Source: Auanema rhodensis (lineage: Eukaryota; Animalia; Nematoda). From it: a DNA stretch of 64,000 nucleotides. The position numbers and the translations under genes are program-made. Every line of letters starts with the position of its first letter. The first letter of the stretch is position 1. Positions 7,227 through 57,533 of the stretch are shown in pieces. The stretch lies in the NCBI GenBank assembly GCA_964057225.1, contig OZ059898.1, positions 11,036,001 to 11,100,000 of the forward strand, in the 5' to 3' direction. Under the pieces are notes generated by a model that saw nothing but the letters and a program-made list of their open reading frames with translations, was not told the origin of the DNA and made no database searches.

Positions 7227-10200
7227 ATAAATGACGACCAGCATATACAACACATAAAGAGAGCTCAGCGTATTTCTTCCTTCCTCTCTTTGAGGCGTTT
7301 TCACACTCGGTCTAAAATGCTCTCCTTACTCTTTTCCTATCTCTTCTTAAATTATGCCAACATACACATGAAGGAAGGACAAGCAAGTTTGAAAACAATT
7401 TAAATATTTTGTGCACTTGGATGTGAATTTTAAGGATTTCCCTTCGTAAATTGTAGTAAAAAGTAAGAAACAGAGAATAAAAAGGTTTCAGTATGTAAAG
7501 CATTCGTACAATTAACGAATTTAGATATGAAGATATATTATCTGATGAGCTAAGTACATAACAGCAATTCAATCATGCTTAACTTATCGCTTTCATGCCA
7601 AAATGAATAGACGAATATATGCATATGATTTTCAAATCTAATAGAATGAGAAAAACAAATTTTTAGTTTCAGAAATAGGAAGGATCATGAAGCTGATTTG
7701 CTTGAAAAAGAAAGCAATTTCTTAAAAAATTTAAAATTTCTTAAAATGTATAGCCGAAATAAGCAGTAACTAGAAAAGAAGTAAGAATACAATGGTTTGT
7801 ATGACTAGAAATAGAGCTGAAAAGTAGCGTCAGTTTATGTTTACGTGTAACAGGAATGCCAATGAATGATTTGGAGAAAATGAACTTTTCAGAACAAACC
7901 TAGTTCTTTACATCATATCAACAAGTATACAAAGGATAGAGTGGTGAGATGAAGTTGAAGCCACTAACATAAGCATCAGACGCAAGCCCAGTAGTAGTTC
8001 CAGCTAGCTAGTAAGCAGTAGAAAGACATAACAACATTCAAAGCGCCAAAACACTCTCGTGCCTCTTGGCATTATTCGTTCTCTTTCTCCTTTTCTTTAT
8101 TTCTTTTTTCTCTTTCAGTCTGGCACTTTTCCTTACTATTTCTGACTTTTTTTACTTTCTTCTTCCACGATGTTTTTTTTCTCATTCAGCTTTCTTTTAC
8201 TTTTTTTGTATCCAATACACAACACAAAAACTATCATGCCATATACTACTAATTTAGTAAACGTATTCATCAACCATTACCATAATAAAGTCAGTTTTAA
8301 GTTTTTTTCAATATTTCTTCATGAAACTTTTTATTTGAAAAAGTCTTATGAATGAGTTGTTTTCAAGCTAATGAATTTTAAAATTTGATTATATAAAAAA
8401 TTAAATTGTACATAAAGCATTCATATTATAAATAGAAAACGAGATATTGAAAATTTAAAAATCTTTTAATTCTAAAGAAACTATAAGCTATTTATTCAGA
8501 TATGAGTTAATTAATTTGAAATTTTGACGTATCTAAACCTAGGTATACATAGTGTTTTTACGAAAGTAGATCAAAGTAAGTGAAGAGCAAGAAGAAAAAG
8601 AAGAGATTTCCAGGGCTTCGGTTAGAGGGCTAGCGTCGCTTTCCTCATTTGTTGCTTAGCAACCTTTAACCAGTTTTTGCACCCAGATTTGTATATGATT
8701 TGAATTGGAGAAAGCATAACTGAGTTTTATTATGGCTTATGAGATCAGATAACTGAACAATTTGACCATTAACATAGCTGAATAACAAAAAATGATCTAA
8801 TGATCGAGAAAGAGGATGTAAGGAATCAAAGAGATTAAAGAACAAAGCAAAAGAGGGACAGAGAAGGATAAAAAAGTAATAAAAATAACATTATAAATAT
8901 TCTATTCATGTTATTATAAAAAGAAAATTAAGAAACCATCTTAATTATGGGATATGATGTTGCATAAACAACATATATTTTCCCATCAAATGGTATCTGT
9001 ATGAAATTTTCCTCATGAACTTTATAAATTAAATTTTGATTCAAAAACAATTAAGAAAAAGACAGTTTTGTCAGGTGTGTATACTATATGAGATTTCAGT
9101 GATGTTTGTATACTATAAATATGTTTTTTTGAGTAAAAATTATTTTTCTATATTGTTATTGAATCAAGAAATTAAATATATTATATTAATATATGTACAA
9201 CATATGTATATATATATATTTTTTTTTTTGAAAAAAAAAATATTAATAATACATGTATGTATAGATGTACATATAACATAGTATATAACGTATACATATG
9301 CAGAAAAATTTATATTTATTATATCTAAGAGAGATCAATTAACTATATCTTTTTTCTTTTTCCTTTTTTTTTCAGCTCTAAAAATGAATGACATGTTTAA
9401 GTTAGTTATTTGAAAATCTATATAGATATATTATGTATAGTTTATATAATATATATTCATTAAATATATAATATGTAAAAGAAACAGAAAAAAAGTATAA
9501 TTTGATGATCTACTTAATGTAAAAGAAAGAAAGTGAAATAAAAGTAAAAGAGTTTAACACAACAGAATGTTGTGAAGTGAGAGTAACAATAATAAAAAAA
9601 TAAGACGTGAAAAGCAAAAAAAAACGAAAAATGTAGCAAAATAGAGATAAAAAAGCATTTAAGCAGCATGTGTAGCTGTTGCATGTTTGCTGAAAGTTCG
9701 ACAATTAGATTCTGATACTAACACTCCAGATTGTAAAGATTATTTAGTCCTTGAGCAAAAGTATAGTATATTGTTGATGAAAACCTGAGAAAAAGAAGAG
9801 ACATAGAGAGAACAATTCAAAAGCATATTTCCAGTAATATCATATAACCTCAACATTAAATATGAGAATAATTAGTAAACATAAGCTGATATTATCACTA
9901 TACTTTCTATTAGTTGAGTGTATATAATGTTACATGAAGTAGTATCTCTAAGGATATTAGATCATGATAGGAACAGATTTCAACGTAGCAAATATTTTTA
10001 CTATTCCCAGTAGACTAACTATGAAACTAAACGGCCGAAGATCGACAAAGCCGCAAAAAGCAAGACGAAGAGGATAGGATAAGAAAAAGAAAAAAAAACT
10101 TTTTTTTGTGTGTTAATATCCAAATATCATATGACTGACCAAAACTTTCGACCAATAGTGCTATTATTCTGAAGAACAAGAAAAAATATTTCAAATATAG

Positions 10201-49988: not shown

Positions 49989-52631
49989 GGTATTAAACTC
50001 AAACTTTCTATACATTTTTACTTGAAAACGAAAAAAAGTGAAAGTCGGACAATAACATATTCACCACATCTATAACTTTATGGGATCAGTTCTAAACCAT
50101 TATTGTATTCTGTAAATAGTGGAAGTGTTGGTCGAGGACATGAAAAATTTCAAAGAACATCTGAGTTTTAAAAAATTCAAGAAATCCGGTTAATGGTGAA
50201 CATTTATATACTTAAAAGTAAATCCGCAACAATTTTAAACAAAAATGTAAAATAGTTTACGAAATTTGAGTTTTTTTTGTGAAGATTGGTAAGAGAACAC
50301 TCAAACGATAGTATTTTAAAAGACAAATTAATTACTTCTATGAGAGAACAAGAAACATATAAATCGTAAAATATCAGATATATCTAAAAAGAAACAAGTT
50401 ATGGTTCGCTGAAAGAACCTATGGTGTTGGATTTTTAAAGTATGAATAAACTGAACAACAATATATAATCATGAGAAATTGAATAGAATATACATATAGT
50501 AAATGAATGAAGAAGAAGAAGATTGAATATAGAATGCGAAAGAGAAAGGCAGATAGAATATTTGCTTATATGACCATAGTTGGATGGGTACGAGAACAGT
50601 GGAGGAGATGAGAATGAATGTTCGAGTTGATCAAATATGGTAACCGGCTGACTAAAGAACTTGATGAGGCTATTGTGAACCGGAATAGATAGATGAGTTG
50701 AACAACACGATAGCCTTCTGATACGAATAGCGAAACTGCTAACAGATATGCTCTGTCAGCTGGGCGATAGGCTCATATGAAAAATTAGTAAGGTGCAGAT
50801 GACACTAAGATAATAGACAACAGCTTTTGTTTCATATGTTTGTACAGATTTATCTAAACAAAGATAAACTATGTAAAGTGATATACCTGTGATGTTTAAA
50901 AAAAGGAGCAAAATAGAAGCTTATGCATCTGTGTATGATACTTGGAAAGTTGTGGTAATATAAGAATAAAAAATATTGTGGTTTTTTGTGAATTCACAGA
51001 AAAAATCATTGGTTATTCAAATAAAGGATGCAAAAAAGATGAAAAAAATCAAAATGAAAATTCAAGGAAGACGAACAAACTTCAATGACAGGAATATATC
51101 CAGACAGACTGGATGAGGAACATGCTGTGACTGTTGGCCGGATTTTGGATAAAAGGCTAGATAGTTTTCATTCTCATCTGAACAACCACAAAGGAGGTGA
51201 AATAAGATGGCCATGCGGATATAAAGAACTTAGAATGTTTATTAAAACATAGGTAAATAACCGTCTTTCTACACAGAACTTTTGCTTTCCACTTCAACTT
51301 GTTGTCCATCTATCTTTGACGAGTTTATTGATAGAGGAAAACATTTTCATAGATGTTCCTGTCCGAAATAATTCACATTCACTCATATACACATGCATAC
51401 TTTAAATTTCAGACAAACAGTACCATTATTAGTCGATATTACAAGAAAAACCAAAAATAAATAAAAAATTTGATTTTTTGATTGGTTACAACTTATTGTA
51501 ATAGATATATTATGTCTTCTGTACAACTTTCGTAATTTATCTCTATATATAGACGTTTAGGGTTATAATATGATGAGGTCTTCAATTTTTGATTATAATA
51601 TAAATGTTTGTTCTTAGCTTAATGACGTATTCGAATACCGACTCGACCTTCTTTCCTCAACCAAAATTGAAAACAAATTGTTTGAAAATGAACTAAATTT
51701 ACAACCTAATCCTTATAAATCGAGCATATTATTCGTTATCAAAATTTAGTCTTTTATTATCATTGAGTTCTTTTGTTATTCTCGTCAACAACTTCAGGTA
51801 TATGTTGTTAATATTCATTACGAAGTGCTTGTGTACGGAATAAACGAACAACCTGTGATATTATTCATAAATGCATTATAATCATTAAAACCTTTGCTGT
51901 TGTTTCTCCTGCTCAGGATCAAGAAAGATATGATCATAGCTTCCTCATTTACAGAGATTTATCTTTTGTTACACTATGTTTATATTAGATGTTTCGCTAT
52001 ATTCTTGTAACATAGGTTATGACAAAACATTCTCATTTAATTCTTCTTTGGTTTTCATTAATGGTATATCAAGTTTTATTTACTTATCTGATACAAACGT
52101 TCATCCTCTTTTGATTATCAGCTATATTTGATACGAAAACGTAGTTTTCTCTGAAACTTTCAATGAAGCAAGAAAATGAAAAAAAAAGAAGAAAAGTTAT
52201 AGAAAAGAGCTCGAGAGCGAAAAAGTATTTGATTATATGTAGTCTATAAATTATGTGTGTATCTTTTATATTCGAATGCTTATATGAGAATCATAATATA
52301 AAATCATTTAAATTCCATTCTCCCTAACTGAAAATGAAAAATGCCGTTTAATCATAGTGAACATTACGTAGTGAACTCCCTTTTTGTACACACGCAAAAA
52401 TAAAGGGGCTATATCTATGGATTTCCATATTAATAAGTTATAAGTGCCTTCTGATTTTACAAATTTTATCCTTAATATTCAATGCATACATTGTTATCTT
52501 ATCTGTTTCTGGAATCTACTGTTATCTTTTTAGCCTTGCATTGCTCTCGCAGCTGAATTCTTGTTCTTTGTACCTACATCACACCACCACTATTGAGTAT
52601 CAACTAGTTTATTTCTACTCCGAAGCTTAGG

Positions 52632-55600
52632 ATGGTATTTCTAACAATCATTATTATTAGTGGTTTATTATTCCTATTATGGCTCTACTCAAAATACATA
52701 GCGGAGGTCAGTTTTTTTAAATTTATGTTGATATACAACTTGGCATCGATTAATCAATTTGGATATGAGGGAAAATTCCAGGGTTCTAAAAAGTGTAAGT
52801 TCAGATATTACTAATAGTGGTGGTGTGATATAAGGAGTTCATTAAATTAAATGTTTTATTCTTAAATTCTCTATGTTGAACTTTTTTTTTGGAACTGTAC
52901 ACGATTAATCCGAACCGTACGCAACTAGCTTCATTGAAGTTGTTCTTAGGATTAACCGTCAGTTGTTTTTTGTTCTCTGTTCTACATTATTTATTCCGTT
53001 TTCTTTTGCGTCTATGAATATTTTACAGAATTATGCTGCAATCGTAAAACAATTGGCATTAAACTGTATTAATATTCCTAGTGTTTTTCTTGCACATTGC
53101 CACAGTTTAAGCTTATTTTATATTTACAGTTCATGATATCATAATGACGGACTTCACAGATCAACCCCTCGGGTTACTTTGCGAAGTGACACGTCGCGAA
53201 TTGGTTCATTTACTGGAATCTTTACCTGGTCCCAAAGATTTAGTTGTGGATTCTACTTTACTGAGGCCATTAGATAAAGTTGCTTCAATGACACTTCTCC
53301 AAAATCATGGCTGCTCTCGCGTAATGCCTCTGCGAACAGACTCTGTTTTGTCTTGGGATCAAAATATTTCAAGAAGAATATACATCCTTCGGTCATCGTT
53401 CGAAATGGCCCGCTTAGTTTCTCAACACGTTAGAGCCTCTCCTGACAAACAGATAGCAGTTATCTGGGTGGATCGTCGCTTAGCAATATGTGATCGTGAG
53501 CAGGAACGACAAGGTGTTTTCGGAATAGTGGAAAATTTCGAATTGCACATGTGTCTCCTTCCAATTGAAAATGATCTTTTCTCTCTGGAATTACCTTTCA
53601 CTTCACCTCCTAATCTGTTCCAAGCCGCTCATTCGTTATTTCAACTGCAGTCTTTGTACGGACTTATACCTACTGTCTATGGACTTGGAGAACAAACTGA
53701 GAAAATGTGGAAATTACTACGTATGCTTTATGTGGAACGAGGAGAGCCACGAGCCTCACCTGATCAACCAATAAGCCATCTTTTCGTTTTTGATCGTTCT
53801 CTAGATCCTGCATCTGTTCTTATGACAGGCTTGACATATGAAGCTATGTTACACAACGTTTTTACTATTGGATGTGGGAAAATATCATTTGGTTCAGAAG
53901 TGCAGTCACGAATGAAAACTGATTCAAAAGATGGAGAATCTCAAAAGTCCAGGGTGTTCGTCCTGGACAATAATGACGGCGTATTTGCTTCTGTTAGGAA
54001 TAAGCATATGACAGGAGTTTTTCCATTTCTTAGTGCAAAAGCTAAAGAAATTCAATCAACCTATGATAAAGGGGCTTCCATTGACCAAGTTCAAGATATG
54101 AAACAATTTGTATCGCAAGAGTTGAAAGTTCTAAAACAACAACATCGTCAACTTGAAATGCATATATGTGCCTGTGAAGTTCTTTTGGAACGAAACAATG
54201 CTGTTGGAGCAAGCGAACGTCTTCGTTATGAACAAGAGCTTGTTGCTGGAACAGCTAATATTAATGAAATAATAACATATTTGGAAGATTGTTCATTAAG
54301 ACAAGTATCACCATGGCAAGTTCTAGCTTTGATTTGCTTAGCTTCAGTCACCAACAATGGTTTACCTTCCAAAGGCTATCACTCATTTAGAGAGCATTTC
54401 CTGCGAGCATACGGATACGAATATCTGCCTGTTCTTCATAACCTTGGTACGAAGAAACTTTTTTTCGAAAAGATCAAACCTGCAGTTGGCAATATAGTTC
54501 AATCTGCTATTCCAACGATGAACTCAAATTCCAGTGGTGATCAAACACCCACTTTTGCTTTCTTATCGAAGCGACTTAATTTAACTCCCAGTTCGGACGC
54601 AAATCACATCGACTTGAGGAACCCTTCCAAAATGAGCTATGTATTTTCGGGAGTATTCACACCTCCTTTTTGCCAAATAGTGTCAGATGCAATGGTTCAT
54701 GGATGGAATACTAACGACATGAAAAAGACGTTCGGACATGTTTTAGTGGAAGAGAACAGTTATACCCCAGCGGACCGAAAGCCTGACAATCGCATGAAGA
54801 AAGCCATTCTCGTGTTCTTTTTGGGAGGTGTAACATATGCCGAAGTCGCTGCCCTAAGGCTTTTAGCTGTTCAGAACAACTTTCGTATTTTAATAGCAAC
54901 TACGAATATTATCCAGCGTGAACAATATATTCGATGTATGGGAGAAGCGGATTCGAAGCTTCTGTGAGATAAATAAATATCGTTTGATTCAATCAATTAA
55001 TGTTCTGGTCGCTAAAATTCAACGGGTTATGTAAAAGTTTGTAATTTATGTAAGTGGGAGTGAACTCAACTTTGGTGCACCTAAAAGTCAAGTAGAATAA
55101 TTTTTTTATTTTAACATGTTTCAGAAACCGCGGGTTTATACTAAATTTGGGTCTGATCTGTATTGTCGTGTGCACAAGCATTTATCTCTTTTGAATGAGG
55201 TTTTTATCATGTCTAATATTGTTCTGTAAATGAGCATTCAGGAATATAAACCAACATGGTGGTGTCCATTTGGAACTGCAATGACTATAGTTCGACAGGT
55301 TTTCCGCAACTGTCCCAATCTTCCTTTTGAAAGGTATGAAAGTTTTAGATTCTTGAAGTAAGCATTGAATTTCTAGAGAAATTATTACTTTATCAGACTC
55401 TGGAATAGTTGGTATTGACTGGCTAATTCCATCCAAGTCTCATGAAGAGAGTCCCATCATAATTTTCTTACCTGGTATCACAGGTAATATTATATATTTT
55501 TTTTCAAAGGTTTTAATTTTGGAGATAATGGTAAAATCTACTGAAACATTATGTTTTGTTAATCAATTTTGTTATTATTCAGTAGAGAGACATAATATTT

Positions 55601-56797
55601 TTTAAAAAATATATACATTTGTATATTTGAATATATGAGTGTGTATTTATAACTTTTTTATACTATATCCTCACATATGTGCATTAAATTATTCATTTTA
55701 ATTATAGGATCTACTCATGAAAGTGCTTATATTCTTCATTGTGTGACTGAGGCCATTCAACATGATTGGAAATCTGTAGTAGTTAATCCACGAGGATTGG
55801 GTGGAGTTCCTTTGAAAACTAAACAGTAAGTTACTGGATTTCCCTTGAGCATTTGACCGAGGCTTGGTTACACCTTTTAAAATCCTATATACATGTTTTT
55901 CAGAACATATAATGCTTGCTATACAGAAGATATTGATCAGGTTATTCAGATCATAACTGATCGTTATCCTAAAGCCAAAAAAATCGGTTGTGGCTTTAGT
56001 ATGGGAGGGTAGGACTGTAAGAAATTGTTCAGCAGCTAAACAATAATATTCAGAATGATTTTGGGAAGTTATATTTCTACGAAAACTGCGAAAACTGTAA
56101 ATCTGGAAGCAGCAATGATCATATCTTCTCCTTTTGACCCTCATGTTTCTTCCCAGTCCTTAGAGGTTTTTGAGGAATATTCTTGAATTATGATTAATAA
56201 TTCCGCCTTACAGACACCTATTCCTCGTTTTCTTTTCAATCAACATTTAGCTGGATGTCTTGTAAACATCATTAAACCGTTAGTTCTATTTCATACTAAT
56301 TACATAAATCATTACTTTGCAGTTATCGAGAATTATTCAAAGATGTAACTGATTTTGATGAAGTTTTGAAGGCAAAAACTATTCGTAACTTTGATACAAT
56401 ATTTACTAGTCCCGTATTTGGTTACAAAAATTGCCGTGAATATTATGAGGATGCTTCGCTCTGTCGCAAGGTTTTAACTATCTCTCTCAACAATCTCCAA
56501 CCAGCATGGTTGTTTAGGTCCAAAAGTTCCCAATTCCTACTATTTGCCTCAATTCTGTAGATGATGTGTTTGCCCCAATTAAGTGTATGTTTTTTACTTT
56601 CTACTATTACTGTTACATTCGTTTAATTTTCAGCAGTGCCACTTGATGTCATAACTGAATCCGAAAACGTGGTAGCAATTGTAACTGCACATGGAGGACA
56701 TACAGCTTTTATGGAACACTGGAATCCAAACAAACAAGGATTAGTAGAGAAATTGCTCGCACAATGGGGAAATATTATTTTTAATGACCTTGATTAA
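52632..56797 (+). CDS. ABHD1/ABHD3-family alpha/beta hydrolase with N-terminal membrane anchor (host gene)
   Basis: Exon 1 (52632-52706, MVFLTIIIISGLLFLLWLYSKYIAE, phase 0) joins exon 2 at 55125 (tttcag|KPRVY). Later motifs: YKPTWWCPFG, IDWL, IFLPGITGST, VVVNPRGLGG, nucleophile GFSMGG, LNSVDDVFAP (Asp), HGGHTAF (His). TAA at 56795-56797; frame intact. Confidence 0.9.
53121..53129 (+). promoter_or_regulatory. 3' splice / trans-splice acceptor for the nested vps-33 transcript
   Basis: TATTTACAG ends 14 nt before the ATG; a second TTTTACAG lies at 53021-53028. Confidence 0.6.
53144..54967 (+). CDS. vps-33.2: Sec1/Munc18-family protein VPS33 (VPS33B/vps-33.2 type), intronless, nested in ABHD intron 1
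   Basis: 607-aa uninterrupted ORF. LVHLLESLPGPKDL, LLPIENDLFSLELP, HLFVFDR, MKQFVSQELKVLKQQHRQLEMHICACE and ILVFFLGGVTYAEVAALR are Vps33 signatures; the MKxFVSQELK..KQxHR.L..HI.ACE block resembles VPS33B. Confidence 0.92.
   Translation: MTDFTDQPLGLLCEVTRRELVHLLESLPGPKDLVVDSTLLRPLDKVASMTLLQNHGCSRVMPLRTDSVLSWDQNISRRIYILRSSFEMARLVSQHVRASPDKQIAVIWVDRRLAICDREQERQGVFGIVENFELHMCLLPIENDLFSLELPFTSPPNLFQAAHSLFQLQSLYGLIPTVYGLGEQTEKMWKLLRMLYVERGEPRASPDQPISHLFVFDRSLDPASVLMTGLTYEAMLHNVFTIGCGKISFGSEVQSRMKTDSKDGESQKSRVFVLDNNDGVFASVRNKHMTGVFPFLSAKAKEIQSTYDKGASIDQVQDMKQFVSQELKVLKQQHRQLEMHICACEVLLERNNAVGASERLRYEQELVAGTANINEIITYLEDCSLRQVSPWQVLALICLASVTNNGLPSKGYHSFREHFLRAYGYEYLPVLHNLGTKKLFFEKIKPAVGNIVQSAIPTMNSNSSGDQTPTFAFLSKRLNLTPSSDANHIDLRNPSKMSYVFSGVFTPPFCQIVSDAMVHGWNTNDMKKTFGHVLVEENSYTPADRKPDNRMKKAILVFFLGGVTYAEVAALRLLAVQNNFRILIATTNIIQREQYIRCMGEADSKLL
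54972..54977 (+). terminator. AATAAA poly(A) signal of nested vps-33, inside the host intron
   Basis: AATAAA lies 4 nt after the TGA and ~150 nt before the host exon-2 acceptor at 55124. Confidence 0.55.
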
Positions 56798-57533
56798 TAA
56801 GTCATTTGTATCAAAATTTGAAGAGCTTTCTTCATAAATCTCACAAAAAGTTCCATCAAAAGCGCTTTTACGGATCCTTTGAATAATGATATTGAAATTT
56901 TTCCTTAGGCATACTAAACATCCTAGTCAAAAACTCAGATAGATTATTTCGCACGATAAAACAGGTCATACTTAGACTTACTATAATAAATATACGAAAT
57001 TAAAATTTAACTGAACGGAATTTCTTTGTATTTTGTTTCCACCCGCACCAACATTTTCATTGATTTCATAATAAATAAAGTTTTTCTTCCTCCACTAAGA
57101 GTTCTAGAATACAAAGTTTACAAAACATACTTTTTGTAAAAATGATGGTTCTCATGAGCTAACTGAAAGTTTTTTTTGAGCCCTGAAGAGCTGAAGATGA
57201 AGAGCTCACCCTACTGTTCTCCGAGTTCTCCAATTATTTGACTTCGATATTTAACATGTCGATAGTATATTTTAAAGATTTGAACTTAATAAGGAAATTA
57301 TGACATCTATTGCCCAATTATACGAAATCGATTGGAGAATCGGACTGTTGAATCTGTTGAAACCATAAAGAGTAAGTAATCAATCGAGAAATCTAGATGA
57401 AGTAAGCGATTTCGCTTATTGTTGGATAAAAATGTAGGAAGAGTGAGGGAGGAGCCAAATATGTGCTTTTCTTTTGTCACAAGCCTTTAGCCATTTTAGG
57501 CAAATAATAACAAAAAATAGAATTTTAGAATCA

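What the first reader, a model, noticed from the sequence alone, without database searches (positions are those of the whole stretch)
52632..55199. Complete vps-33 gene nested on the SAME strand within intron 1 of an ABHD lipase
Seen: host exon 1 (membrane anchor, donor 52707) and exon 2 (acceptor 55124) flank a 2.4-kb intron that holds the whole 1824-bp VPS33 ORF, its own acceptor (53129) and AATAAA (54972). Established: nested genes are more often antisense, and the nematode unc-17/cha-1 locus is a same-strand, shared-first-exon precedent. Inference: each host pre-mRNA must choose between skipping 2.4 kb (ABHD mRNA) and using the internal acceptor plus poly(A) site (VPS33 mRNA). Two unrelated membrane-biology proteins would then be mutually exclusive outputs of one transcription unit.
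Basis: partly seen in the sequence, partly recalled or inferred. Interest (0 to 1): 0.85.

Follow-up and report, generated by a model that had tools for sequence, protein, structure and literature searches.

The report
VPS33B gene inside a lipase gene
In this roundworm a complete membrane-traffic gene (VPS33B) sits as one big exon inside the first intron of a lipase-like gene on the same strand; RNA shows the two messages use different first exons but share the lipase's remaining exons, and distant roundworms keep the same layout.

Summary
Spliced RNA contigs from four runs of one study show the junction 52706^55125. The 25-codon membrane-anchor exon is therefore exon 1 of an ABHD-3-type hydrolase (11 exons, 375 aa). 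Its 2418-nt first intron holds the whole intronless VPS33B ORF (53144-54967).

- No contig joins exon 1 to the VPS33B acceptor. VPS33B contigs start at 53128-53130 with at most 5 foreign letters, which suggests a short spliced leader.
- VPS33B contigs do not stop at AATAAA (54972). They run to a donor at 55050 and splice 55049^55125 onto hydrolase exon 2. One 3273-nt contig continues to the hydrolase poly(A) site near 57090.

The locus therefore looks like two alternative 5' exons feeding one shared body. This is closest to C. elegans lev-10/eat-18 and less like cha-1/unc-17.

The order exon 1 – VPS33B – exon 2 is kept in eight nematodes of clades V and III. Public annotations often fuse the two genes into one protein. 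I found no paper on it.

Earlier notes of this scan list several other same-strand nested pairs in this genome, so the layout is a recurring kind. Still open: the leader, the VPS33B transcription start and the isoform ratios.

The parts
52510..52523 (+). Acceptor-like motif TGTTATCTTTTTAG just upstream of the exon-1 transcript. It is a possible trans-splice site for the hydrolase mRNA.
   Evidence: It aligns with TTCTGTTTTAG at the same place in Auanema sp. JU1783 (L001), and L011 carries the near-identical TGTTATCTTTTAG. RNA contigs of exon 1 begin at 52528-52532. Its function is inferred.
52528..52631 (+). 5'UTR of hydrolase exon 1.
   Evidence: It is covered by contigs in X1, X2 and X4, with no coverage at 51500-52469. 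A 34-nt block is identical to Auanema JU1783.
52575..52594 (+). 5' arm of a long-range inverted repeat, lying in the exon-1 5'UTR.
   Evidence: It is the top inverted repeat of the region: 20 nt, 95% complementary to 52813-52832. It is in both the MFE and centroid folds. The homologous pair is the top repeat in L001. The best helix has 20 pairs against a maximum of 16 in 40 shuffles.
52632..52706 (+). Hydrolase exon 1 coding part: 25 codons forming the N-terminal membrane anchor, with its donor at 52707.
   Evidence: Junction 52706^55125 is seen in 3 runs. The peptide is homologous to the N-termini of all full-length nematode abhd-3 proteins (LWLYS.Y motif).
52707..55124 (+). Hydrolase intron 1 (2418 nt, GT..AG), which contains the VPS33B exon.
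   Evidence: joint table.
52813..52832 (+). 3' arm of the inverted repeat, 106 nt downstream of the exon-1 donor.
53130..55049 (+). VPS33B exon (1920 nt), from acceptor 53129 to donor 55050.
   Evidence: Contigs start at 53128 in X2, X3 and X4 and end or join at 55049 in all four runs.
53133..53147 (+). Mini-uORF ATG ATA TCA TAA whose stop overlaps the VPS33B start (TAATG). It is in the same frame exon 1 would have if spliced here.
   Evidence: Similar ATGAT[AC] mini-uORFs occur in L001 and L007.
53144..54967 (+). VPS33B (vps-33.2-type Sec1/Munc18) ORF: 607 aa, no introns.
54972..54977 (+). AATAAA after the VPS33B stop. Its use is not shown.
   Evidence: It is present in the sequence. All contigs read through it. 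No AATAAA lies between the VPS33B stop and the donor in L001 or L011.
55050..55124 (+). 75-nt intron (GTAAGT..CAG) that joins the VPS33B exon to hydrolase exon 2.
   Evidence: Junction 55049^55125 is seen in X3 and X4. A GTAAGT/GTGAGT donor 52-82 nt after the stop is kept in L001 and L011, and a spliced form is seen in the L007 transcript.
55125..55199 (+). Hydrolase exon 2 (KPRVY...). It is shared by both transcript classes and has no start codon.
55242..56584 (+). Hydrolase exons 3-10: 55242-55333, 55377-55483, 55708-55825, 55904-56008, 56054-56165, 56214-56278, 56323-56470, 56518-56584.
   Evidence: All junctions are GT..AG in four runs. The exons translate to one open frame.
56634..57090 (+). 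Hydrolase last exon: stop TAA at 56795-56797, AATAAA at 57070-57079, transcript end near 57090.
   Evidence: Contigs end at 57089/57090 in three runs; sequence.

Best explanation
This is a compound locus with two alternative 5' exons and one shared body.

(1) Hydrolase mRNA (shown). Transcripts starting just upstream of 52528 carry exon 1 (5'UTR plus the 25-codon membrane anchor). They splice 52706^55125 over the whole VPS33B exon and give the 375-aa ABHD-3-type serine hydrolase.

(2) VPS33B mRNA. It begins at the acceptor 53129/53130 with a short non-genomic leader. The 5' boundary is shown. That the leader is a trans-spliced SL, possibly a mix of SL variants, is inferred. The mRNA carries a mini-uORF and the complete 607-aa ORF in a single 1920-nt exon and reads past its AATAAA. 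It is then spliced from a conserved donor (55050) onto hydrolase exon 2 and continues through exons 2-11 to the hydrolase poly(A) site (shown for at least part of the molecules).

In that mRNA the hydrolase exons lack their start codon and anchor. They therefore most likely act as a long intron-bearing 3'UTR. With the uORF, this would keep VPS33B output low, possibly through nonsense-mediated decay (inferred).

Not resolved: whether VPS33B pre-mRNA starts at the exon-1 promoter or at a start site inside 52707-53129. A conserved 20-bp helix between the exon-1 5'UTR and this intron segment, which loops out exon 1 and its donor, is a candidate switch (inferred, untested).

The layout predates the split of nematode clades III and V. 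It has been broken up in Caenorhabditis, Haemonchus, Steinernema and Mesorhabditis.
For: RNA in the window:
- Junctions 52706^55125 (X1, X2, X4) and 55049^55125 (X3, X4).
- Contig X2-4 carries exon 1 plus the full hydrolase.
- Contig X3-8 (3273 nt) is 5 letters + 53128-55049 + exons 2-11 to 57090.
- VPS33 contigs start at 53128 in three runs, with exactly 5 extra letters in two of them. That pattern fits a branch among short leaders. An exon-1 join would have added about 30 nt.
- The X1 unspliced contig 52677-55049 is not broken at 53130.

Gene model: the reading frame is open over 11 exons. The protein is 53% identical over its full length to C. elegans abhd-3.2 and 73% to the Auanema hydrolase part.

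Conservation of exon 1 – VPS33B – exon 2:
- Auanema JU1783.
- Anisakis and Toxocara.
- Gnathostoma and Pristionchus fissidentatus. In Pristionchus the public annotation already draws the hydrolase gene across VPS33.
- Two Logan genomic contigs, L008 and L011.

The donor right after the VPS33 stop is kept in L001 and L011. A transcript contig from a further species (L007) has VPS33 spliced 17 nt after its stop onto KPRLY... plus the whole hydrolase.

No conserved Met follows the exon-2 acceptor in the orthologues, so the hydrolase needs exon 1.
Against: - All RNA evidence is from de Bruijn contigs of one study. Contigs give no abundances, no true ends and no strand, and they drop rare forms.
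- The share of VPS33B mRNA that is spliced to exon 2 is unknown. So is the share cleaved near 54990.
- The leader is only 5 unread letters, and all candidates (SL1, SL2, exon 1) end in AG.
- In L008 and L011 only about 115-155 nt separate the exon-1 donor from the VPS33 acceptor. This is little room for a separate promoter and keeps a shared-promoter or shared-exon route alive.
- The exon-1 frame would stop at or next to the VPS33 ATG in all five species checked. That looks designed for an exon 1–VPS33 mRNA.
- In the ascarids the VPS33-to-exon-2 distance is 0.7-2.9 kb, and no RNA was examined there.
Confidence: 0.6

Rival explanations
1. Shared first exon. Transcripts from the exon-1 promoter either skip the VPS33B exon (hydrolase) or splice exon 1 to 53130. 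VPS33B is then translated by re-initiation after the 29-codon exon-1 uORF that ends in TAATG. This would be a cha-1/unc-17 or CPNE1/RBM12-type locus.
For: - The exon-1 frame would stop at or within 8 nt of the VPS33 ATG in the window (TAATG), L001, L011 (immediate TGA), L008 (ATGA) and Pristionchus (immediate TAG).
- The exon-1 donor lies only 115-225 nt from the VPS33 acceptor in L008, L011 and L001.
- In nematodes an upstream donor normally forces cis-splicing (established knowledge).
Against: - No exon 1^53130 junction appears in four runs, although exon 1^exon 2 is seen in three.
- VPS33 contigs carry only 0-5 upstream letters, where an exon-1 join would give about 30.
- Run X3 has VPS33 RNA without any exon-1 contig.
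- The X1 unspliced contig is not split at 53130.
Confidence: 0.15
2. Ordinary independent nested gene. VPS33B has its own promoter in 52707-53129, is SL1 trans-spliced and ends at its own poly(A) site near 54990. The 55049^55125 junction is read-through noise from a leaky terminator, as seen at many closely spaced same-strand nematode genes.
For: - AATAAA lies 5 nt after the stop.
- Low-level RNA is present across 52802-53005.
- Contig depth of the hydrolase exons is several times that of the VPS33 exon in X1, X2 and X4 (a weak measure).
- Haemonchus, Steinernema and Caenorhabditis run VPS33B as a stand-alone gene.
Against: - A consensus donor 52-82 nt after the stop is kept in three genomes whose UTRs are otherwise unalignable, and AATAAA is not kept.
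- The spliced VPS33–hydrolase RNA is assembled as one full-length contig here (X3) and in another species (L007).
- No contig ends near 54990, whereas contigs do end at the hydrolase poly(A) site.
Confidence: 0.2
3. Operon-like unit. One pre-mRNA is processed by 3'-end formation after VPS33B and SL2 trans-splicing at 55124, giving a leaderless, anchor-less hydrolase isoform alongside the exon-1 form.
For: - The 147 nt between AATAAA and a U-rich acceptor resemble an intercistronic region.
- The L007 contig begins with TCAAG, the last letters of C. elegans SL2 as I recall it (weak).
Against: - Exon 2 has no start codon. The first in-frame Met (residue 64) is not conserved, and the conserved YKPTWWCPFG block would be lost.
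- The acceptor is demonstrably cis-spliced to two donors.
Confidence: 0.05

Closest known systems
C. elegans lev-10 / eat-18 locus (PMC7173930)
   Same: The first exon of an unrelated gene lies in the host's first intron on the same strand and is spliced onto the host's exon 2. The host's own exon 1 skips it.
   Different: The eat-18 ORF runs 16 bp into the shared exon in another frame and encodes a 71-78-aa protein. Here a complete 607-aa housekeeping protein ends 82 nt before the donor, so all shared exons are untranslated in that mRNA. This pair is also kept across nematode clades III and V.
C. elegans cholinergic locus cha-1 / unc-17 and the unc-60A/B locus (PMC3875643)
   Same: Two different proteins come from one same-strand overlapping unit. 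The nested gene lies in the host's first intron, and the choice is made at RNA processing.
   Different: Those loci share the 5' exon and have separate 3' ends. Here the 5' exons differ (no shared-exon junction seen) and the 3' exons and poly(A) site are shared. The two products have no known common pathway.
Human CPNE1 / RBM12 promoter- and 5'-exon-sharing pair (PMC2568002)
   Same: Two genes with entirely different coding sequences lie in one same-strand unit, and the arrangement is conserved over long evolutionary time (human, mouse and zebrafish there).
   Different: CPNE1 and RBM12 share the promoter and the 5' untranslated exons. Here sharing of exon 1 was looked for and not seen, and it is the 3' exons that are shared.
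Nematode operons with SL2 trans-splicing (PMC1657053, listed; abstract only)
   Same: Closely spaced same-strand genes that are co-transcribed, in a phylum where trans-splicing resolves such units.
   Different: The downstream 'gene' starts upstream of the upstream one: its first exon precedes VPS33B. Its exon 2 is cis-spliced, not shown to be SL2-spliced.

Membership tests
VPS33B / vps-33.2 (Sec1/Munc18 family) | Full-length Sec1 domain | tested here: met
   Pfam PF00995, E 1.3e-84, profile positions 1-574 of 575.
VPS33B / vps-33.2 (Sec1/Munc18 family) | Orthology to VPS33B rather than VPS33A | tested here: inconclusive
   The best named hits are VPS33B or vps-33.2 (P. pacificus vps-33.2; Branchiostoma VPS33B 38% over 97%). 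No tree with VPS33A was built.
ABHD1/ABHD3-type (abhd-3) alpha/beta hydrolase | Alpha/beta-hydrolase fold with a GxSxG nucleophile and Asp/His motifs | tested here: met
   GFSMG at 186, VDD at 313 and HGGH at 341 in the spliced 375-aa product. The 73%-identical Auanema part hits PF00561, PF12146 and PF12697. The catalytic roles are inferred by homology.
ABHD1/ABHD3-type (abhd-3) alpha/beta hydrolase | Single N-terminal membrane anchor followed by (K)P..Y and the Y.P.WWCPFG block | tested here: met
   Exon 1 plus exons 2 and 3 give exactly this. It aligns from residue 2 with C. elegans abhd-3.2 (53% identity). The N-termini of over 20 orthologues are listed.
cha-1/unc-17-type shared-leader locus | Nested gene in the host's first intron on the same strand | tested here: met
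cha-1/unc-17-type shared-leader locus | Host exon 1 is spliced onto the nested gene | tested here: not met
   No 52706^53130 joint appears in contigs of four runs, while 52706^55125 is present. Contigs can miss rare forms, so a minor isoform is not excluded.
cha-1/unc-17-type shared-leader locus | Nested gene ends at its own poly(A) site inside the host intron | tested here: inconclusive
   AATAAA is present at 54972, but every contig reads through it and two splice on to exon 2. No 3'-end data were available.
lev-10/eat-18-type alternative-first-exon locus | First exon of the nested gene lies in host intron 1 and is spliced to host exon 2 | tested here: met
   Junction 55049^55125 (GT..AG) in X3 and X4, with a full-length contig. 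The same is seen in L007.
lev-10/eat-18-type alternative-first-exon locus | Nested ORF continues into the shared exon in another frame | tested here: not met
   The VPS33B stop is at 54965-54967, 82 nt before the donor.
Nematode SL2 operon | Downstream cistron receives SL2 at its acceptor and is a complete ORF | tested here: not met
   Exon 2 lacks a start codon and is cis-spliced to two upstream donors. SL identity is not testable with contig tables.

The most novel reading that the evidence does not exclude
VPS33B and the ABHD-3 lipase are two outputs of a single ancient transcription unit. On one pre-mRNA, a conserved RNA helix between the exon-1 5'UTR and the intron decides the outcome. 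Either the exon-1 donor is used (lipase mRNA), or it is looped out so that the VPS33B acceptor is trans-spliced. The VPS33B mRNA then deliberately carries the whole lipase body as a decay-tuning 3'UTR. Under this reading the two membrane-biology proteins have been reciprocally coupled since before the clade III/V split.
Probability: 0.15. Interest if true: 0.75.

Novelty: new variant of a known kind. Interest (0 to 1): 0.55.

Why it matters
- It gives an RNA-backed example of two unrelated, broadly conserved genes that have stayed interlocked on one strand across very distant nematodes.
- The twist is unusual: the nested gene's message borrows all the host's later exons as untranslated tail.
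- It explains a recurrent annotation error. Public proteomes of Auanema, Heterorhabditis, Anisakis, Thelazia and Toxocara list 907-992-aa 'VPS33–esterase' fusions that lack the lipase's membrane anchor.
- It offers a compact natural system, with relatives as controls that have lost the layout. That system could be used to study how nematode spliceosomes choose between cis- and trans-splicing at an internal acceptor, and how a 3'UTR full of introns is tolerated.
- Other same-strand nested pairs have been noted in this genome, so it may be one instance of a general feature of non-Caenorhabditis nematode genomes.

Tried and rejected
- Exact-protein look-up of the window's VPS33B found no record.
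- Canonical SL1 was not found in the window. Scan notes say this genome's SL1 genes lie elsewhere and carry a one-letter variant.
- A start codon for the hydrolase between the VPS33B stop and exon 2 was rejected. The frame entering exon 2 has a TAA at 55032 and no ATG after it (read).
- An in-frame VPS33B–hydrolase fusion protein was rejected for this window, because the stop lies before the only observed donor. The fused public models are predictor artefacts that drop exon 1.
- The simple 'retroposed VPS33B' reading was weakened. VPS33B is intronless in Auanema, Haemonchus, Toxocara, Anisakis and Gnathostoma. It has many introns in Pristionchus and Mesorhabditis, and several sit at roughly the same protein positions (about 33, 416-420, 444-445, 468-471). 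This rests on rough HSP boundaries only.
- Long-range 5'UTR–intron pairing beyond the Auanema group was not convincing. It is not significant in Pristionchus or Gnathostoma, and the single-helix test exceeds shuffles only in the window.
- Literature searches for vps-33.2/abhd-3 nesting found nothing.
- The first duplex script timed out.
Full report
**What is in the sequence**

The stretch is nematode DNA: short 42-78-nt introns, TTTCAG acceptors and about 32% GC.
- ORF 53144-54967 encodes a 607-aa protein with a full-length Sec1 domain (Pfam PF00995, E 1.3e-84).
- Its best relatives are nematode VPS33B/vps-33.2 proteins. The closest is Auanema sp. JU1783 at 86% identity.
- Around it lie the exons of an alpha/beta hydrolase.
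- Joining the eleven exons defined by RNA junctions gives one open frame of 375 aa. It has a single N-terminal hydrophobic segment, GFSMG, VDD and HGGH motifs, and 53% identity over its whole length to C. elegans abhd-3.2.

**RNA evidence**

The only RNA-like public runs that hold this DNA are four runs of one 2019 study, kept as contigs. Laid on 51500-57300, they are 100% identical to the window and are spliced at GT..AG, so they are transcript assemblies. Four results matter.
1. Junction 52706^55125 (skipping 2418 nt) is present in X1, X2 and X4. One 1528-nt contig runs 52528-52706 and then through all hydrolase exons to 57089. The membrane-anchor exon is therefore exon 1 of the hydrolase, and the whole VPS33B ORF lies in its first intron. 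Nothing is transcribed at 51500-52469.
2. VPS33B contigs start at 53128 in X2, X3 and X4. This is the AG of the predicted acceptor, matched by the last two letters of whatever is joined there. They carry 0, 5 and 5 further letters.
3. No contig ends near the AATAAA at 54972. All four VPS33B contigs stop or join at 55049, where a GTAAGT donor sits.
4. Junction 55049^55125 (a 75-nt intron) is present in X3 and X4. One 3273-nt X3 contig is exactly 5 letters + 53128-55049 + hydrolase exons 2-11 to 57090.

**Why exon 1 is probably not the VPS33B leader**

- An exon 1^53130 join would extend the VPS33B contigs about 30 nt into exon 1, as it does for the exon 1^exon 2 join (sides of 28-75 nt). Instead they stop after 0-5 letters.
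- The stop falls at the same 5 letters in two runs. That pattern fits a branch between short leader variants.
- X3 has VPS33B RNA but no exon-1 contig.
- I infer spliced-leader trans-splicing. Scan notes say this genome has large arrays of a variant SL1 gene (untested by me).
- This is inference from contig geometry, not a read of the leader.

**Conservation**

Public gene models in Auanema JU1783, Heterorhabditis, Anisakis, Thelazia and Toxocara fuse VPS33B to the hydrolase exactly at KPRVY, the first residues of exon 2, and lack the anchor. I searched the DNA upstream of VPS33B for a Met-led hydrophobic mini-exon ending in a phase-0 GT. A homologue of exon 1 turned up in each case:

| Species / locus | Exon 1 peptide and position |
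|---|---|
| Auanema JU1783 (L001) | MVFLLITLIGGLLSLLWLYTQYASE, 225 nt before the VPS33B ATG |
| Anisakis (L004) | ...LSFWLYARLTAQ, about 0.7 kb before |
| Toxocara (L003) | ...LSLWLYSLLSAQ, 8.3 kb before |
| Gnathostoma (L010) | ...ALWFYAHYFAK, 2.5 kb before |
| Pristionchus fissidentatus (L009) | ...LALFIYSRLVSQ, about 150 nt before |
| Logan genomic contig L008 | ...LYARYITE\|gt, about 115 nt before the acceptor |
| Logan genomic contig L011 | MLYYAPLVVGGGVPLFLWLYSKYVAE\|gt, about 155 nt before the acceptor |

- In Pristionchus the deposited annotation already draws the hydrolase gene across the multi-exon VPS33B gene.
- All full-length nematode abhd-3 proteins start with this anchor. No conserved Met follows the exon-2 acceptor, so the hydrolase cannot do without exon 1.
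- The pair is not linked in Haemonchus, Steinernema carpocapsae, Mesorhabditis spiculigera or C. elegans. In C. elegans the abhd-3 genes sit on chromosome-sized contigs different from vps-33.2 (plus my own knowledge of chromosome lengths).
- The layout is therefore older than the clade III/V split and has been lost several times.

**The VPS33B-to-exon-2 splice is conserved too**

- A consensus donor (GTAAGT or GTGAGT) lies 82, 69 and 52 nt after the stop in the window, L001 and L011. Short introns of 75, 55 and 49 nt then lead to the exon-2 acceptor.
- The surrounding UTR is not alignable, and AATAAA is present only in the window.
- A 3117-nt transcript contig from another species (L007, SRR10133172) has VPS33B, 17 nt of UTR, then KPRLY... 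and the entire hydrolase.
- I therefore read the splice as a regular fate of VPS33B transcripts, not an accident of this sample.

**Mechanism proposed**

- Two alternative 5' exons feed one shared body (exons 2-11 and the poly(A) site). One is exon 1, which is anchor-coding. The other is the 1920-nt VPS33B exon, probably SL-capped.
- With exon 1 the shared body is coding.
- Behind VPS33B the shared body is a roughly 1.4-kb 3'UTR that had ten introns. Together with the mini-uORF ATGATATCATAATG (53133-53147, with similar uORFs in L001 and L007), this should restrain VPS33B output. The translational consequences are inferred, not shown.
- Where VPS33B pre-mRNA starts is open. The short exon 1-to-acceptor spacing in relatives argues for the exon-1 promoter region. 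The lack of an exon-1 join argues for a start downstream of the exon-1 donor, or for a way to silence that donor.

**A candidate switch**

- The strongest inverted repeat in 52480-55200 pairs 52575-52594 (exon-1 5'UTR) with 52813-52832 (intron). It is 20 nt and 95% complementary, and it loops out the exon-1 coding part and donor.
- It is in both the MFE and centroid folds and exceeds all 40 shuffles.
- The homologous pair is the top inverted repeat in Auanema JU1783. The 5'UTR arm sits in a 34-nt block identical between the two species.
- L011 keeps pairing around a CCACCA/UGGUGG core with different flanks.
- Beyond this group the signal is not convincing. Its role is untested.

**Comparison with what is known**

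- The nearest precedent is C. elegans lev-10/eat-18, where the first exon of eat-18 lies in lev-10 intron 1 and is spliced to lev-10 exon 2 (PMC7173930).
- cha-1/unc-17 and unc-60 share the 5' exon instead (PMC3875643), as does human CPNE1/RBM12 (PMC2568002).
- This locus differs in three ways. A complete 607-aa housekeeping ORF is packed into the alternative first exon. That ORF ends before the splice. All downstream host exons are shared.
- Searches for vps-33.2, abhd-3 or VPS33B/ABHD3 nesting found no paper.
- Earlier notes of this scan list other same-strand nested pairs in this genome (XPR1, PSTK/OGG1, apyrase/amx-1, METTL2/nsun-5). I did not test these, but they suggest the layout is common here, which tempers the surprise.

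**Limits**

- There are no abundances, no strand, no true ends and no leader sequence.
- The SRA accessions behind L007, L008 and L011 give no species names here.
- The window hydrolase protein has no stored reference, so it was analysed only inside scripts and through its Auanema orthologue.

Noticed in passing
window 52575-52594 and 52813-52832; L001 9642-9658 and 9888-9904: A conserved long-range helix links the exon-1 5'UTR to the intron segment before VPS33B and loops out exon 1 and its donor. The 5'UTR arm lies in a 34-nt block identical between the window and Auanema JU1783, far more conserved than the coding sequence around it.
   Followed up: partly
window 53133-53147; L001 about 9990-10008; L007 11-25: A mini-uORF (ATGAT[AC]...) starts just after the VPS33B acceptor, and its stop overlaps or closely follows the VPS33B start codon. 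The exon-1 reading frame would also stop at or next to the VPS33B ATG in five species.
   Followed up: partly
P0001, P0011, P0023, P0028, P0031: Public proteomes of Auanema JU1783, Heterorhabditis bacteriophora, Anisakis simplex, Thelazia callipaeda and Toxocara canis carry 907-992-aa VPS33B–hydrolase fusion models. These join at KPRVY and omit the hydrolase's membrane anchor, so they look like systematic mis-annotation of this locus.
   Followed up: yes
L002, L003, L004, L010 versus L006, L009: VPS33B is intronless in Haemonchus, Toxocara, Anisakis, Gnathostoma and the Auanema group. It has a dozen or more introns in Mesorhabditis and Pristionchus, and some sit at roughly shared protein positions. 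The intronless state may be repeated wholesale intron loss, not one old retroposition.
   Followed up: partly
L009 3124-8509: Pristionchus fissidentatus has a second abhd-3 paralogue, with its own anchor exon, in tandem directly upstream of the nested pair.
   Followed up: no
L007 1-5: The transcript contig of another species begins with TCAAG, 12 nt before the VPS33B start region. These are the last five letters of C. elegans SL2 as I remember it. It is a weak hint that VPS33B may receive an SL2-type leader.
   Followed up: no
P0054: An Aphelenchoides besseyi model named 'AB hydrolase-1 domain-containing protein' is actually VPS33B fused to ribosomal protein L19e. It may be another mis-joined model at this locus in clade IV.
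   Followed up: no
window 52677-53129: In run X1 one contig runs unspliced from inside exon 1 through the intron segment into VPS33B. X2 and X3 have low-depth contigs at 52802-53005. This segment is therefore transcribed, as host intron, outron or a long-leader isoform.
   Followed up: no
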